A stretch of 64,000 nt of DNA. It comes from Haliotis rufescens (lineage: Eukaryota). A program made the position numbers and the translations under genes. Below, piece after piece: positions 36,189-61,119 of the stretch (positions are counted from its first letter, which is position 1; the number at the start of each line of letters is the position of its first letter). The stretch covers positions 930,001 to 994,000 of the forward strand of contig NW_025964355.1 of the NCBI RefSeq assembly GCF_023055435.1. The letters are read 5' to 3'. The notes under the pieces were generated by a model. It was not told where the DNA came from. It did no database searches and saw only the letters and a list, made by a program, of their open reading frames with translations.

Positions 36189-36832
36189 TGGGGACTGCTT
36201 CACCAACAGGCACCAAGACTGCGACGAAGTCAGGAACCACTAGGACATCGGCAACTAAATCCACATCGGACAGTACAACCAACTCTGCGTCAATAACTGA
36301 CACCACGCCCTCACAGATTACTACAATTACAACGGCTACAACTTCAACATCGACAACATCAATCGCCCCTGTTTCGACGACTACAATCAGATCTACTTCC
36401 AACAAAACCCCAACGACACCAACGACACCAACGACACCAACTCGAGATAAAGCAACGCCGACAACTACACCAATTGCACCCATGGTCACCAATCCCTTTG
36501 CAACCACCAACACTACTGGGAGCAGCACTTCAGTTCCAGGACGCGTCAACGTCAGTGGTGGAGTCACGGCGACCATAACAGCTGCACTACAAACATGTTA
36601 CGACCGATGTGCGAGACCAGTAGGGGCTACATCTACCCTTTTTAACGCCATACGCAGCCTGCGCCTCGATAAGGAAGACCTCTCCAAACAACGTCGTGAG
36701 AAAACGTCTGCATCCGATGTCAGACCGTCGGCGACTATTGTCGCAACTCTGGTTCTTGCTATTGTCTGGACGCCCATACTAGGTCTGGTCATATGGGATC
36801 TGATCGATCTTTGTCGCAACAGACACATTTGA
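36189..36832 (+). CDS. Terminal exon: Thr-rich mucin stalk, conserved juxtamembrane module, TM (paralog A)
   Basis: cag|(V)GTASPT...CYDRC...LRLDKEDLSKQRREKTSASDVRPSA-TM-WDLIDL; phase 1 matches VWA exon. Confidence 0.88.
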
Positions 36833-37359
36833 ACTACCGACAAAACTTGTCAACTACATGTACTATTTCCTCCTTGGCTATGTTTGAAATACATCAAGAG
36901 GACGTTATGTTTAATATCGTGTCAGTAACTAAAGGAAAGAAACTGTATTTAGTTAATTTACAACTTGAACTATTTACACATAAGTTACACATATGAATTG
37001 TAGCCAATCACATGATAGCAAAGTTATTTATCAAGTTAGGTTAATTGTCATAAGCGTTTTGTTGGTGTAACGTTGAAATATATGTTGACAAGAATGTTGT
37101 GTAATATTGGGAATATATACACTGTATATACTGAGATGAGAAATAGCTGTTATATTTATAATTGATAATTGAAAACTTATAACAATGATGATTAATTAAA
37201 CTAAATTTAGACTGTGGCTTTACATTCTGAAAATCATTTGAGGGTGTACATCGAAAAATATTTGATAAGGCGGATACGGGAATATTGATTCCGTTGTAAT
37301 GTGTATTGACATCAAAGAGAAAGTCCCTTTTCAAATGTTGTTCCTTTCTTACGTTTCTA

Positions 37360-37683
37360 TACTCCGTGGCCTAGTGGTAGCGCGTCCGTCCGGAGAGCGG
37401 AAGGTCCGGGGTTCGATCCCCGACCGCGTCATACCAAAAGACGTTAAAAGATGGTACTTGGTGCTACCCTGTCTGGCGCTCGGCTGACAAGGACTGGTCA
37501 GTATACTGTGTCTGAGTGGGGTATTCATGTTAAACTGCGGCATGGTATCTCAGTGAGCTAGCACTATAAATCGGCATCAGTCCGGACTAGTACAAGCAGC
37601 CACACAAACACACACACGTACATGTACGTCGCTATATAAGTGCAATAATCTGGGACGCGACGTTAAACCCTATTTCACCTCAC
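37360..37683 (+). mobile_element. Meta/MESC-type SINE with TSD
   Basis: TSD tacgtttcta. Confidence 0.88.
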
Positions 37684-38399
37684 TACGTTTCTACAAATGT
37701 CATAGAAAACTAACATCAACACGTTACAATGACTGTATTCGAATTTGTAAATTTGAAAAATAGAGTACATGTATTTTACTAGAAAGCCATATCAATCTTC
37801 AGTCCACATAAACACCGGTACACTTCTATAATCAAAGAATGGATTTTGACATGTGGGGTCATGAAACATAAACTAATGTATTTGACAGTACATTATGAAA
37901 GGCAACATGTCATTGCAATGCGATTTATTAGTATGTGTCAACTAGAAGTAATATTGTCGACAACTGTCTGGCAGAATTCCAGTATATGTAATTTCAGATT
38001 CAAATCACACAATATATCAAGGTTTCCTCCATACATATCAGTACCTGAAATATGAATATATATCGTGACTGATAGCTCTCGATATTAATGCTCCACTGAC
38101 GGACTCGTTTACTTCAGGGGTCTATTGTTTCTTATCAATTGTCAGCGATCGGGTCTGTATGTTAGTCAAATACACAAGCCAACATTCTAGATGTGATTGA
38201 TAATGTCAGTCAAGTGATTGAATGATTCTATTTATCTTTTATTTCTGGTACACATGTACTAATGTTTCTAACTCAAACATGATTAGATATGGCGTGATTT
38301 TCCTGCTGTGATATTTGTTTTGTAATGTTATGTTGTGCAGTCATGTTATTCAATTGCAATGAAAGTGTTTCAACTAGATGTGAATCGCAGAAAATAGCT

Positions 38400-38790
38400 A
38401 CGTACAATAGTGGCGATGGGGATAAGCGCGTTCTGAAATTAAGACGTACGTTTTATTTTTCATCTTTTCGCGAACAACTGGTAGCATCACTATTTGATTG
38501 TGATTCATAACACATGCTCGTGATATAGTCGAAAGTCTGTATATTCTCGGCTGTTGTTTAATCCATGTTACAACATTCTTTGCCTAAGTAAAGTTTTCGA
38601 AAAGTGTTCTGGTACACATGTGGGGAACTTTTCCAAATTGTGCGCATCAGTGACAAAAATAACGTCCGATGCCATTCCCTCTTTGACTCGTACCATATGC
38701 TCCATTGGTATTATTTGTCAGGTAACAATTGACTTGCCTGTGTTTGTGACGGGTGACCGGTGAGGCAGAATCAGCGGTGTCATCATCACT
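38400..38790 (+). mobile_element. Penelope-like RT 3' fragment
   Basis: RLLFNPCYNILCLSKVFEKCSGTH...SVTKITSDAIP followed by gacgggtgaccggtgaggcag. Confidence 0.6.
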
Positions 38791-57872: not shown

Positions 57873-59217
57873 CAGGATCTATATACAACAAATGCGTCGC
57901 ATGTACAACATGTGCACTGCACAATAAGTCTTGGTTAAGGATTGAAATATCATATTGTACACGTTTCATAGGGAAATGTCATGATGTCATGGTGTATATA
58001 CATTTCCATGCAAAGGAGTAATGCATGTTAAGTAAACATGTAAGTATCTTTATGAAAAAGTATTAAATTTGATATTTGCCTTTAGAAGACAAGGAAAGGT
58101 ACATGTATGTTCTTTTCGGTCGAACAGAGTTTCAAAAATTCAAATATTTGATAACCAATTAATAAATTCCTATGAATTATTTTTTTAGGTGTAATCATTA
58201 CTGAGAATATTAATTGGGTAAAATGGTCACGTTGGAAAAAGGCGTGAAAAAAGCTATATTTGAAACGTAATAAGCAAGTCTGTGATCCAAGCTTTTGACC
58301 AAAATCATCATTATCGAGAGAGCTTGGGTAAAGTGTTTTCTTAAAATATCAAAACAAAACGAATCGGGCATGTGTTAAAACAAATCCAGACACATTTGTA
58401 AGACGTGTTTAAACTCTAGCTCACTTTTCATTTTGCCAAATTCTAAATAGCAGTACAAATGAGTTTACACTTATAATCTGTAATACAATGTACATGTTCC
58501 GGAACGCATTAATGTGTTTGGTTGTAGAATCATTCCCTATTTTCGGTTTGGATGTTGTCAATAGGCCCGTATGTCTGACTTCAAAATATCCTTTGGTGAA
58601 AAACCTCAATGGTAAAATAATCTCAGAAGTGTTTCAACCATCTATTTTCATCACGTAAAAGAGTGTTTTAACTGAATTGATATTTCATTTAAAGGGTGGA
58701 TGCATAAGCTTTTTGAGATGGTGAATTCAAAAGCGCTTGTTACGACCCACCGATTTCCAATACATGTGCAATGTGTGTAAAACTTTTTCTGATGTTCCCC
58801 TTGACCAGAGTATTCTAAAAACCTCTCTCATTCGATCAAATATTTTAAAACTGTTATATAAATGCAATACAAATATTATATTGCATGTCACATGCTTCAG
58901 GAACAGATGTGCCTTCAATACTGTTCACTGGTTAACTTTATGGTTGTGTTCATTTTTCATTAGCGATTAACAGTAGCATGAAAAGTTTGAAAAAAATTAC
59001 TGAGATCTGATATTCTGTGTTGCCCGAATAAGAGCAAATACAAATTGGATCAGGCACTATCTTAAAAAAGTGTCACTCTGGTGCGTAATCAATCTTTCAA
59101 GCCATATAAACAATGCAAATGATTTTTTTCGACAGTGAAATCATCATTTAAGTCACTCTTTGAAAGGGTCTATTTGAGAAATTATAATAAGCCCACCACG
59201 GTGAGTCCATATTAACA

Positions 59218-59563
59218 GACCGCCTCCTTGGCCTAGTGGTAGAGCGTCCGCCCGGGGAGCGGAAGGTCCGGGTTTCTATCCCCGGCCGCGTCATACCAAA
59301 AGACGTTAAAAGATGGTACTTGTTGTTACCCTGTCTGGCGCTCGGCATTAAGGGGCTAAAACAATGACTGGTCGGTTGGAGTCAGTATACTGTGTCTGAG
59401 TGGGGTATCCATGTTAAACTGCGGCATGGTATTTCAGTGGGCTAGCACTATAAATCGGCATCAGTCCGGACTAGTACAAGCAGCCACACAAACACACACA
59501 CGTCGTTATATAAGAGCAATAGTCTTGGACGCGACGGTAAACCCCATTTCACTTCACCTCACC
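59218..59563 (+). mobile_element. Meta/MESC-type SINE with TSD
   Basis: TSD tccatattaaca. Confidence 0.9.
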
Positions 59564-59899
59564 TCCATATTAACATATTTTTTAAAACCATATTTGTTTG
59601 ACATTTCTAATAAGAATGTGTTCCTTTTCTATCAAGCTATTGATTACAAAAAAGAATGATACATCTTGCTGGATGTGTACTTACGAAACGGTGATATAAC
59701 ATCTCGTTTGACCAACGCCACTGCTGTACATGCACAATAAAGCGGCAAAACCCTTTCCATAATCACATGTTAAACGAGAATGCATTAGGACTTTATCATA
59801 AACATGTGTTTGGAAATCAATATCAAATAGTGATGATACTAGCTGTTCACGAAAAGGCGAGCGTATCCTGCCCCATCGTAGGCACCCGTCACAAACACA

Positions 59900-61119
59900 T
59901 CATCGACACCTACACAACCACTTCAAGAATGTCAGCAGGTCTGGTACAACGATGAAGACAAAGGGAAGTACTAACATTACAATCCCTGACATCCCAATGA
60001 CATTTGAGGACTTTCTGTCGTCCTGTTTACTGACCTTCTTAGCAATTTCTGTCGTCAAGAGTTCTGTTTCAACTGCTAGATCATTTTGCAGTTCTTCTCC
60101 TCTTTGAACAGCCTCTTCTTGCACCGTTGGAACTGCCGCGGGTCTACACCGACACGTGCACTTCTGTCGTATTGCTCTTCCATAGCTATCCCAAGCAAGA
60201 ACCTGTCCATCTGGATGAGGTGTTGTGACAGCATCGGTTGTAACGGCAGCAAGAGATGTCGATGAACCGGTCGACGTTGATGACAGTATCGTCGAAGGTG
60301 ACGTGACCGACGTGGAGGTAAACGGTGCAGGTGTGGTTGTGGCTGTGGTAGGCGTTGAAGTTGTGGTTGTAATTGTGGTTGCGGTATGCGTTGAAAATGT
60401 GTTTGTGGGTGTGGATGTGCTAGGCGCTGTGTTTGTGATTGCGGTCGCGGTTGTGGTGGGCGCTTTGGTTGTGGATGTCGTGGATGTCGTTGTGGCTGTT
60501 GATGGCGTTGTGATTGTGGTGGGCGCTGTGCCTGTGGATGTCATGGCGGGCGTTGTAGTTGTTGTAGGCGTTATGGTGGACGTGGTTGTGGGCGTTGTTG
60601 CGGGCGTTGTGGTCGGCGTTGTTGTGGACGTTGTGGTGGGCGTTGTTGGGGACGTTGTCGGCGTTGTTGAGGGCGTTGTGATAGGCGTTATGGTGGGCGT
60701 GGTTGTAGTTGTGAGCGTTGTCGAGGGCGTTGTGATAGGCGTTGTGGTGGGCGTGGTTGTCGTTGTAGTTGTGGGCGTGGTTGTGGGCGTTGTGGTGGGC
60801 GTTGTTGGGAGCGTTGTTGATGGCGTTGTTGAGGGCGTTGTGGTGGGCGTTGTGATAGGCGTTGTGGTTGGCGTGGTTGTCGTTGTAGTTGTGGGCGTTG
60901 TGGTGGGCGTTGTGGTGGGCGTTGTTGGGGGCCTTGTTGATGGCGTTGTTGAGGGCGTTGTGGTAGGCGTTGTGATAGGCGTTGTGGTGGTTGTGGTTGT
61001 CGTTGTAGTTGTGGGCGTGGTTGTGAGCGTTGTGGTGGGCGTGTTTGTGGAAGTTGTGGTTGTCGTTGTAGTTGCGGACGTTGTGGTTGTGGAAGTTTTG
61101 GTTGTGACACTCACTGGAA
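59900..61119 (-). CDS. Terminal exon: Thr/Pro mucin, CxCxC, juxtamembrane module, TM (paralog C)
   Basis: catcag|xVPVSVTT... phase-1 acceptor; CTCRC...LAVETELLTTEIAKKVSKQDDRKSS-NVIG-TM-PDL; upstream exons not identified. Confidence 0.88.

What the first reader, a model, noticed from the sequence alone, without database searches (positions are those of the whole stretch)
36189..61119. Cluster of three single-pass membrane proteins sharing an unnamed juxtamembrane module behind swappable ectodomains
Seen: the terminal exons at 36189-36832 (+), 42012-43999 (+) and 59900-61119 (-) end in alignable segments. A: CYDRC..LRLDKEDLSKQRREKTSASDVRPSA-TM-WDL. B: NMCIS..LALKKPNLSRHIRDKTSAVDHRVSS-TM-WDL. 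C: CTCRC..LAVETELLTTEIAKKVSKQDDRKSS-TM-PDL. Consensus is Cys motif, helix, L.h....Ls...r.K.S..D.R.S, a Pro-containing TM, then DL and a very short basic tail. Each exon opens with a phase-1 acceptor, yet the ectodomains differ entirely (VWA+Thr mucin; acidic S/G repeat; T/P mucin). I know no named domain for this module. Inference: a mollusc surface-display or anchoring cassette, possibly for oligomerisation or for shedding at the basic K.S..D.R site, onto which recognition and glycocalyx modules are shuffled.
Basis: partly seen in the sequence, partly recalled or inferred. Interest (0 to 1): 0.8.

Follow-up and report, generated by a model that had tools for sequence, protein, structure and literature searches.

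The report
Unnamed mollusc membrane-anchor exon family
Three neighbouring abalone genes end in the same last exon, one copy of a large unnamed mollusc family that appears to tether many different outward-facing protein domains to the cell membrane.

Summary
All three ORFs end in the quoted segments, each behind an AG acceptor in phase 1. A profile of 38 paralogue tails, with no window rows, scores them 96, 65 and 54 bits. The best of 6000 block-shuffled decoys scores 18.

The module is not special to this cluster. The profile finds at least 133 copies in this 1.33-Gb genome and 2786 cluster representatives in public proteins, almost always at the C-terminus. Of 30 hits looked up, 26 carry names. 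All 26 are molluscs, from gastropods, bivalves, cephalopods and a chiton, and none has an informative name.

Pfam, PDB sequences and Foldseek give nothing. Six paper searches found no description.

Partner domains among 82 longer hits include C-type lectin (21), IgGFc-binding (12), kringle, EGF, sushi, discoidin, PAN, WSC, VWA and Ig.

I read it as a phase-1 terminal exon cassette: stalk, Cys knot, amphipathic helix, conserved juxtamembrane motif, single-pass TM and an invariant Asp. Oligomerisation and shedding are inferences, not shown. Both assembly gaps lie outside the three exons and were not tested.

The parts
36189..36832 (+). Gene A terminal exon: phase-1 acceptor, Thr-rich stalk, module, stop
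   Evidence: A contig of run X2 joins 35097|36189 with GT..AG ends. A 225-nt contig of run X1 is identical over 36626-36850.
36596..36829 (+). Module of A: C-x3-C, helix, LSKQRREKTSASDVRPSA, TM at about 36734-36796, W-D-L, and a tail of 10 residues after the Asp
   Evidence: Scores 65.0 bits against the leave-out profile. Sister to B in the tree.
34594..35097 (+). Gene A VWA exon, spliced to the terminal exon. Its reading frame breaks at about 34641-34650.
   Evidence: Pfam VWA, E 5.1e-19. Frame change seen. Relatives carry a net 43 extra letters at this spot.
42012..43999 (+). Gene B terminal exon: phase-1 acceptor, acidic Ser/Gly-rich repeats, module, stop
   Evidence: The acceptor is read from sequence only.
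42221..43587 (+). B ectodomain repeat: 48-nt period (16 aa), 28.2 copies, 90% matches
43721..43996 (+). Module of B: a single Cys, helix, LSRHIRDKTSAVDHRVSS, TM at about 43868-43927, W-D-L, and a tail of 22 residues after the Asp
   Evidence: Scores 54.1 bits against the leave-out profile.
59900..61119 (-). Gene C terminal exon: phase-1 acceptor, Thr/Pro mucin stalk, module, stop
   Evidence: The tail is 77% identical to the Haliotis rubra protein P0022.
60558..61069 (-). C stalk repeats: 12-nt period, 42 copies, with a 120-nt higher-order unit
59903..60160 (-). Module of C: CTCRC, helix, LTTEIAKKVSKQDDRKSS, TM at about 59942-60001, P-D-L, and a tail of 12 residues after the Asp
   Evidence: Scores 96.4 bits against the leave-out profile. 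AF2 gives pLDDT 84 with helices at 22-37, 45-51 and 59-94.
40727..41102 (.). Assembly gap upstream of B's terminal exon. B's 5' exons are unresolved because of it.
   Evidence: Continuity not tested.
54934..55106 (.). Assembly gap between the convergent 3' ends of B and C
   Evidence: Continuity not tested.

Best explanation
The three exons are copies of a large, unnamed, mollusc-wide family of terminal exons that serve as a ready-made type I membrane anchor.

Each exon opens with a phase-1 acceptor and encodes the following, in order:
- a variable low-complexity stalk;
- a Cys knot, usually C-x-C-x-C;
- often an N-x-T sequon;
- an amphipathic helix of about 16 residues;
- the motif L-x-V-x-K-x-x-L-S-x-x-I-R-K-K-x-S-A-x-D-x-R-P-S-A;
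- a single-pass TM helix with G-x-x-G;
- an invariant Asp at the inner end of the TM;
- a short, net-positive cytoplasmic tail.

Shown here: the family exists, it sits at the C-terminus, its phase is conserved, and it is joined to many unrelated extracellular domains. A and B are a local tandem pair whose ectodomains were replaced. C is a distant paralogue.

Inferred, at about 0.4: the odd number of Cys, the amphipathic helix and the small-x-x-small TM motif hold the chains together as disulfide-linked oligomers next to the membrane. Low-affinity lectin-type or glycocalyx ectodomains would then be displayed multivalently.

Inferred, at about 0.3, and not exclusive of the first: the conserved di- or tribasic R-K-K site about 12 residues above the membrane allows regulated release of the ectodomain.
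For: - Family size: at least 133 profile matches in the own genome. In public proteins, 2786 representatives at E<=1e-3 and 1833 at E<=1e-10.
- C-terminal position: a median of 4 residues follows the match, and more than 60 follow in 7 of 189 proteins.
- Conservation over 163 tails that are no more than 80% alike: C .91/.85/.85, L39 .96, S55 .97, D58 .98, R60 .98, G67 .98, D85 1.00.
- Phase 1: the three window exons, a spliced contig for A, and 8 of 8 resolvable pairs among 22 examined.
- Partner domains in 82 hits of 250 aa or more: Lectin_C 21, IgGFc_binding 12, Kringle 7, EGF 5, Sushi 4 and others.
- Topology: the tail after the Asp has a median of 20 aa and is net positive in 95%.
- Oligomer idea: three Cys in 127 of 163. 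Hydrophobic positions 28, 32, 35 and 39 have a period of 3.5-3.6.
- Release idea: a dibasic pair at positions 47-55 in 133 of 163.
- Constraint: between the window and H. rubra, C's tail is 77% identical, against 61% over the 314-aa terminal-exon alignment (tail included) and 50-56% for the N-terminal domain.
- Tree: A and B are sisters (support 0.90). C is sister to P0022 (0.99).
Against: - No experiment or multimer model bears on oligomerisation. AF2 was run on a monomer only, and it breaks the helix at the L-x-V-x-K segment. Pro occurs at position 42 in 19 of 163, so a long coiled coil is unlikely.
- A and B have only 2 and 1 Cys.
- R-x-[KR]-R occurs in only 3 of 163, so furin-type cleavage is not a family trait.
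- Only 26 of 81 longer public models show an N-terminal hydrophobic stretch by a crude test. Many models are truncated, so type I topology rests on the kinds of partner domain and on the charge of the tail.
- Transcription evidence is thin. It consists of contigs of runs whose RNA label is a guess.
- Gene A's VWA exon is out of frame in this assembly, so A may be a pseudogene here.
- Taxon sampling covers only 30 of the best 150 hits. Members outside Mollusca are not excluded.
Confidence: 0.8

Rival explanations
1. Adaptor-coupling chassis. The nearly invariant residues (S55, D58, R60 outside the membrane, G67 and G70 within it, D85 at its inner end) would not serve self-association. They would dock every family member onto one shared membrane partner, such as a signalling or trafficking subunit. 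That would give receptors with very short tails a common output.
For: D85 is invariant in 163 of 163, and G67, D58 and R60 are at .98. This conservation holds across family members whose ectodomains are unrelated. The cytoplasmic tails are short (median 20 aa after the Asp) and carry no recognisable domain. Conservation of this kind fits recognition by a common partner better than a mere spacer.
Against: No partner was sought or found. After D85 the pattern h-h-p-h-h-+ fits an interfacial amphipathic helix. The Asp may therefore sit at the membrane surface rather than inside the bilayer. The same residues could equally serve homo-oligomer contacts or a processing enzyme.
Confidence: 0.15
2. 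Dedicated shedding or processing site. The module's main role would be to be cut by a sheddase, convertase or intramembrane protease, releasing lectin or mucin ectodomains into mucus, haemolymph or shell matrix. The anchor would be only a transient step of secretion.
For: A dibasic pair lies 10-15 residues above the TM in 133 of 163. Small residues (S-A) directly precede the TM, and helix-destabilising G and P occur inside it. From general knowledge, recalled and not tested here, syndecans and ZP proteins use such juxtamembrane basic sites.
Against: The R-x-[KR]-R consensus occurs in only 3 of 163. The Cys knot, the helix and the invariant Asp beyond the TM are not explained by a cleavage site. 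No proteomic evidence was available, because supplements of shell-proteome papers were closed. The passages of PMC6003135 shown for my four terms hold no 'shedding' or 'ectodomain' and do not discuss this module.
Confidence: 0.2
3. GPI-anchor signal. The C-terminal hydrophobic stretch would be a GPI attachment signal that is removed, as the automatic name of C's H. rubra orthologue suggests ('putative GPI-anchored protein pfl2').
For: The source's name for P0022. Small residues (S-A) lie before the hydrophobic stretch.
Against: There are only about 2-3 residues between S-A and the hydrophobic run, so no polar spacer. The hydrophobic run is followed by a conserved Asp and a tail with a median of 20 residues that is net positive in 95%. 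GPI signals normally end with the hydrophobic stretch (general knowledge). The automatic name most probably comes from the Thr-rich low-complexity region.
Confidence: 0.03
4. Chance resemblance. The three tails would look alike only because TM segments and their flanks share composition.
For: Without the TM, A-C and B-C reach only z=3.4-3.6, with 38 and 42 of 5000 shuffles as good. Single-sequence genome searches do not link C with A or B.
Against: Leave-out profile scores of 96, 65 and 54 bits against a maximum of 18.4 in 6000 block-preserving decoys. Hundreds of independent homologues share the same invariant residues.
Confidence: 0.01

Closest known systems
Syndecan juxtamembrane, TM and tail region (Pfam Syndecan, PF01034; properties recalled from general knowledge)
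   Same: Both are type I anchors behind an unstructured, heavily glycosylated ectodomain. Both have a basic protease-sensitive site close to the membrane, a TM with a small-residue motif used for self-association, and a short tail. Gene B's acidic Ser-Gly repeats look like glycosaminoglycan attachment sites.
   Different: No sequence match: Syndecan is not among the Pfam hits. The module has a Cys knot, a helix, S-A-x-D-x-R-P-S-A and an invariant Asp. It lacks the conserved syndecan C1/C2 tail. It is attached to globular domains of many kinds.
Matrilin and thrombospondin/COMP-type oligomerisation modules: Cys next to a short coiled coil (recalled)
   Same: Both have cysteines directly before an amphipathic helix with a heptad-like stripe. 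A VWA domain lies upstream in gene A and in P0126, as in matrilins. The proposed role, covalent oligomerisation of adhesive domains, is the same.
   Different: The module is membrane-bound rather than secreted. Only about two clean heptads are present, and the helix is interrupted. No Pfam match to a coiled-coil family. Oligomerisation is not shown.
SEA domain plus TM of membrane mucins (recalled)
   Same: Both are membrane-proximal modules behind a mucin stalk, used with various N-terminal parts and linked to ectodomain release.
   Different: SEA is an alpha/beta domain of about 120 aa with an autoproteolytic site. This module is about 55 extracellular residues and is predicted helical. No Pfam SEA match.
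ZP-protein C-terminal propeptide: furin site, hydrophobic patch, TM (recalled)
   Same: Both have a basic site shortly before a C-terminal TM and a very short tail. The anchor is a processing intermediate.
   Different: A furin consensus occurs in only 3 of 163. No ZP domain appears among the 25 partner families listed.

Membership tests
Unnamed mollusc terminal-exon anchor family (defined here by profile A1) | Significant match to a family profile built without the sequence itself | tested here: met
   C 96.4, A 65.0 and B 54.1 bits, against a maximum decoy score of 18.4.
Unnamed mollusc terminal-exon anchor family (defined here by profile A1) | Core residues S55, D58, R60, and Asp directly after the TM | tested here: met
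   A has TSASDVRPSA...WD, B has TSAVDHRVSS...WD and C has VSKQDDRKSS...PD. G67 is present in C only. A and B have A/V there.
Unnamed mollusc terminal-exon anchor family (defined here by profile A1) | C-x-C-x-C knot | tested here: inconclusive
   C has CTCRC. A has C-x3-C and B has one Cys. Their 6-member subclade shares C-x3-C. Family-wide, three Cys occur in 127 of 163.
Unnamed mollusc terminal-exon anchor family (defined here by profile A1) | Last exon, entered through a phase-1 acceptor | tested here: met
   for all three. A spliced contig supports A. 8 of 8 resolvable paralogues are phase 1.
Syndecan (PF01034) | Match to the Pfam model, including the conserved cytoplasmic C1/C2 regions | tested here: not met
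   No Pfam family at E<=1 for the three ORFs. Syndecan is not among the 25 families listed for 41 tails. Fifteen weaker families were not shown.
SEA domain | Match to the Pfam SEA model; alpha/beta fold of about 120 aa | tested here: not met
   The AF2 model is helical.
GPI-anchored proteins | C-terminal signal: omega site, polar spacer, a hydrophobic end without a charged tail | tested here: not met
   No spacer. The tail after the hydrophobic run has a median of 20 aa and is net positive in 95%. No dedicated GPI predictor was available.
Furin-processed C-terminal propeptides (ZP type) | R-x-[KR]-R before the TM | tested here: not met
   3 of 163.
Coiled-coil oligomerisation domains (matrilin/COMP type) | Continuous heptad repeat of three or more heptads; demonstrated oligomer | tested here: inconclusive
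   The hydrophobic stripe 28/32/35/39 has a period of 3.5-3.6. A polar or Pro position 42 and a helix break follow. The oligomer state is not testable with these tools.

The most novel reading that the evidence does not exclude
The module is a Mollusca-specific universal receptor chassis. More than a hundred genes per genome would plug lectin, FcGBP-like, kringle, sushi, discoidin, VWA and mucin ectodomains into one invariant juxtamembrane and TM unit. Its conserved S-x-x-D-x-R, G-x-x-G and inner-end Asp would couple all of them to a single shared membrane partner or processing machine. That would be a germline-encoded, exon-shuffled innate recognition repertoire with a common output. It would be analogous in logic, but not in sequence, to vertebrate receptors that pair with DAP12- or FcR-gamma-type adaptors through charged TM residues.
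Probability: 0.12. Interest if true: 0.85.

Novelty: new variant of a known kind. Interest (0 to 1): 0.55.

Why it matters
Thousands of mollusc proteins now labelled 'uncharacterized', 'mucin-like' or 'cell wall protein DAN4-like' share a sharply conserved C-terminal unit that no domain library I could search recognises.

Naming it would have three uses:
- It would improve annotation. It marks the true 3' end and the membrane topology of many fragmentary gene models, and it flags merged tandem models.
- It would define a large, tandemly expanding set of cell-surface lectin-type and glycocalyx proteins that are candidates for mollusc innate recognition, mucus and shell-forming epithelia.
- It would give a clean case of phase-1 exon shuffling of a membrane anchor.

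The few invariant residues (S55, D58, R60, G67, D85) are direct targets for mutagenesis.

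Tried and rejected
Searches that found no match:
- Pfam on the three ORFs and on 41 tails gave only scattered weak single hits.
- A PDB sequence search with the profile gave only GPCR TM noise at E>0.5.
- Foldseek of the AF2 model against the PDB gave nothing at E<=0.001.

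Weak searches:
- The word-index protein search performed poorly on this module. It gave 5 hits for P0037, 39 for the alignment of short proteins and 9 for an alignment headed by C's whole ORF, where mucin words swamped the candidates.
- Because of this, I could not list members beyond the best 150. Presence outside Mollusca is therefore untested. I recall seeing similar K-T-S-A-x-D-x-R-P-S-A stretches in other marine invertebrate phyla. That is memory only and no call supports it.

Paper searches that found no description of the module:
- 'DDRPSA' returned 0 papers.
- Five-letter motif pieces returned only noise.
- juxtamembrane, exon shuffling and mollusc terms.
- A Lottia locus tag.
- CXCXC, transmembrane and mollusc names.
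- juxtamembrane or membrane-proximal with mollusc genera.
- In PMC6003135 I read only the passages found for four terms. They do not concern the module, and its supplementary tables were closed.
- InterPro, CDD and PANTHER could not be queried.

Readings rejected: GPI signal, furin propeptide, and chance similarity (see the rivals).

Not attempted:
- A multimer structure prediction, because the tool folds single natural sequences only.
- A gene model for B's 5' part, because of the gap and the absence of an orthologue among the hits.
- Any joined, spliced protein. All searches used the terminal-exon tails or single exons.

Full report
**What is in the window**

- A (36191-36829, +) ends ...CYDRC...LRLDKEDLSKQRREKTSASDVRPSA-TM-WDLIDLCRNRHI.
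- B (42020-43996, +) ends ...NMCIS...LALKKPNLSRHIRDKTSAVDHRVSS-TM-WDLFDL...
- C (59903-61138, -) ends ...CTCRC...LAVETELLTTEIAKKVSKQDDRKSS-TM-PDLLTFLKWLCRCR.

Each claimed exon start follows a pyrimidine tract and an AG, and leaves two bases before the first full codon, which is phase 1.

For A the junction has outside support. A contig of run X2 joins 35095 to 36187 with GT..AG ends (cut +2, so 35097|36189). X2 comes from a relative that is 95-99% alike, and its RNA label is a guess. The join links the VWA exon in frame to the terminal exon. A 225-nt contig of run X1 is identical to 36626-36850. B's and C's acceptors rest on sequence alone.

**Is the similarity more than chance?**

- Whole tails beat every shuffle: A-B z=24.7, A-C 8.9, B-C 9.9, with 0 of 2000 each.
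- Without the TM, A-B stays strong (z=8.6, 0 of 5000). A-C and B-C are weak (z=3.4 and 3.6, with 38 and 42 of 5000 shuffles as good).
- Single-sequence searches of the whole genome agree. A finds B but not C. C finds 54 other places but not A or B.
- The link is made by the family. A profile of 38 paralogue tails, with none from the window, scores C 96.4, A 65.0 and B 54.1 bits. The best of 6000 decoys shuffled within the ecto, TM and tail blocks scores 18.4.
- The 187 public proteins held at that point hit the window by tblastn only at the three modules (120, 57 and 10 HSPs) and at the VWA exon.

**The family**

- In the window's own assembly (1.33 Gb, 615 contigs) the profile finds 133 places at E<=0.001. 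This is a lower bound, because 150 of 157 candidates were scored. Many lie in tight clusters, for example six on C583 between 35.79 and 35.92 Mb.
- Among 1.84 billion public cluster representatives it finds 2786 at E<=0.001 and 1833 at E<=1e-10.
- The match lies at the very end of the protein. A median of 4 residues follows it, and more than 60 follow in only 7 of 189 proteins. Eight proteins carry two modules and are probably merged tandem gene models.
- Of 30 hits looked up, 26 have names and all 26 are molluscs. The genera are Haliotis, Lottia, Patella, Gigantopelta, Littorina, Nucella and Bulinus (gastropods); Saccostrea, Argopecten, Pecten, Mizuhopecten, Ylistrum, Tegillarca, Mactra and Dreissena (bivalves); Octopus and Acanthosepion (cephalopods); and Liolophura (a chiton). 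add Mytilus and further Haliotis species.
- The names are 'uncharacterized', 'hypothetical', or artefacts of low complexity such as 'mucin-22-like', 'cell wall protein DAN4-like' and 'putative GPI-anchored protein pfl2'.
- The sample is 30 of the best 150 hits of a Haliotis-built profile, so members outside Mollusca are not excluded.
- The window's genome is an abalone or a close relative, judged from near-identical Haliotis proteins.

**Anatomy**

Frequencies are over 163 tails that are no more than 80% alike.
- Cys at profile positions 12, 14 and 16.91.85 and .85. Three Cys occur in 127 of 163.
- An N-x-S/T sequon lies within 15 positions after the third Cys in 89 of 163.
- Hydrophobic positions 28, 32, 35 and 39 have a period of 3.5-3.6.
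- L39 .96, then V41, K43, L46 and S47.
- R51 .84, K52 .72, K53 .66.
- S55 .97, A56 .75, D58 .98, R60 .98, P61 .56, S62 .89, and A or S at 63, .94.
- The TM follows, with G67 .98 and G70 .79. Pro occurs at position 77 or 84 in about a fifth to a quarter of members.
- D85 is present in 163 of 163.
- Next comes an h-h-p-h-h-+ pattern and a tail with a median of 20 residues that is net positive in 95%.

AlphaFold2 on C's tail with 41 paralogues gives mean pLDDT 84. It predicts a coil over the Cys knot, helices at 22-37 and 45-51, and one long helix at 59-94. The break between the first two helices coincides with position 42, which is Pro in 19 of 163.

**Is it known?**

- Pfam finds nothing for the three ORFs at E<=1 and only scattered weak hits for 41 tails.
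- PDB sequences give nothing, and neither does Foldseek.
- Six full-text paper searches returned no description.
- In PMC6003135 I saw only the passages found for four terms, and they are unrelated to the module.
- InterPro, CDD and PANTHER could not be searched, and supplements were closed.
I could not see its sequence. FAMeT (PF12248) is among the partner domains found here.

**Swappable ectodomains**

Among 82 hits of 250 aa or more, Pfam finds these partner domains:
- Lectin_C in 21 and IgGFc_binding in 12;
- Kringle in 7, EGF in 5 and Sushi in 4;
- Ephrin_rec_like in 3, and discoidin-type domains in 3 and 2;
- FAMeT, PLAT, WSC and PAN in 2 each;
- VWA and Ig in 1 each.

In the window:
- A has VWA plus a Thr-rich stalk. 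The paralogue P0126 has the same architecture.
- B has 28 copies of a 16-aa acidic Ser/Gly repeat.
- C has a T/P mucin. It also has a globular N-terminal domain without a Pfam match, whose exons lie beyond the window's end at L048 971-1228 and 2317-2424, minus strand.

In a tree of the 163 tails, A and B are sisters (support 0.90). They sit inside a six-member clade (0.97) that has C-x3-C instead of C-x-C-x-C and W-D-L-x-D after the TM. C is sister to H. rubra P0022 (0.99) and far from A and B. So A and B are a local duplication whose ectodomains were exchanged entirely, and C is a distant paralogue lying nearby.

The acceptor phase is a family trait. Of 22 protein-locus pairs examined, 8 show a readable boundary, and all 8 are phase 1 with a consistent split codon. 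In 8 others the gene model starts inside the exon, and 6 were unclear.

**How it probably works**

Shown: this is a C-terminal, phase-1 exon cassette that supplies a stalk, a conserved juxtamembrane unit, one TM helix and a short basic tail to many kinds of extracellular domain. Type I topology is inferred from the partner domains and the positive tail. Only 26 of 81 longer public models show an N-terminal hydrophobic stretch by a crude test, and many models are truncated.

Constraint: between the window and H. rubra, C's tail is 77% identical. The 314-aa terminal-exon alignment, tail included, is 61% identical and the N-terminal domain 50-56%.

Inferred functions:
- Covalent oligomerisation next to the membrane. 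This rests on the odd Cys number, the amphipathic helix and G-x-x-G. I put it at about 0.4.
- Release at the di- or tribasic site. Dibasic pairs occur in 133 of 163, but a furin consensus in only 3 of 163. I put it at about 0.3.
- Docking to a shared partner through the invariant residues. I put it at about 0.15.

These three are not mutually exclusive, and none was tested.

**Caveats**

- In this assembly A's VWA exon changes frame at about 34641-34650.
- Contigs of runs X3 and X4, a relative that is 90-95% alike, carry 38 letters between 34645 and 34641. Run X2 ends in loose letters before 34641 that match the end of those 38. The net difference is +43, which puts both halves in one frame.
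- So A either carries a recent frameshifting deletion or the assembly is wrong there. The run with the same species label does not cover the spot.
- The same relatives show in-frame length changes in A's stalk: +9 at 36284 and -18 at 36410.
- The gaps at 40727-41102 and 54934-55106 lie outside the three exons. The first hides B's 5' structure. Only the map distances and B's gene model depend on them.

**Verdict**

The finding is larger than stated. It is not a three-gene curiosity but a pan-molluscan family of terminal anchor exons without a name, with at least 133 copies in this genome. It is a new variant of a familiar kind of thing, a juxtamembrane-plus-TM anchor cassette spread by exon shuffling. 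Its conservation is unusually sharp and its mechanism is unknown.

Noticed in passing
window 34594-34700 (+): The VWA exon of gene A changes reading frame at about 34641-34650. Contigs of two related organisms carry a net 43 extra letters there, flanked by a 5-base repeat, which would keep the frame. This is either a recent deletion (pseudogene or allele) or an assembly error.
   Followed up: partly
L048 971-1228 and 2317-2424 (-), which is G000:C577 just beyond the window's end: Upstream exons of gene C encode a Cys-containing globular domain that is 50-56% identical to the N-terminus of H. rubra P0022. It has no Pfam match.
   Followed up: partly
window 51873-52322 (+): An ORF with a hydrophobic N-terminus and a PAN/apple domain (PF00024, E 2.6e-7) lies between genes B and C. 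No module exon follows it on the + strand within the window. The gap at 54934-55106 lies downstream.
   Followed up: partly
window 11105-11335 (-) and 13876-14166 (-): C-type lectin exon(s). The first ORF matches Lectin_C at E 6.3e-7. The second looks lectin-like by eye but has no Pfam hit. No anchor module lies nearby in the window.
   Followed up: partly
window 47854-49994 (+): A run of ORFs resembles a reverse-transcriptase-bearing retroelement, by eye from the translations. It lies between B and C.
   Followed up: no
window 42221-43587 (+): B's 16-aa repeat is rich in acidic residues around Ser-Gly-Gly. By eye this resembles glycosaminoglycan attachment sites, so B may be a membrane proteoglycan.
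   Followed up: partly
window 36284 and 36410 (+): A related organism's contigs differ from the window by in-frame length changes (+9 and -18 letters) in A's Thr-rich stalk, while indels in the intron are not multiples of three.
   Followed up: no
public proteins P0001, P0002, P0003, P0018, P0019, P0028, P0042, P0102: Eight of 189 public hits contain two anchor modules. Most probably tandem genes were merged by automatic annotation. The module could be used to split such models.
   Followed up: no
loci L003, L004, L014 (G000 C596, C11, C2): Within the A/B subclade, three paralogues have lost the D-x-R-P-S core (T-S-T-S-N-L-S-E-S type) while keeping W-D-L-L-D-L after the TM. This suggests that the two conserved blocks can evolve separately.
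   Followed up: no
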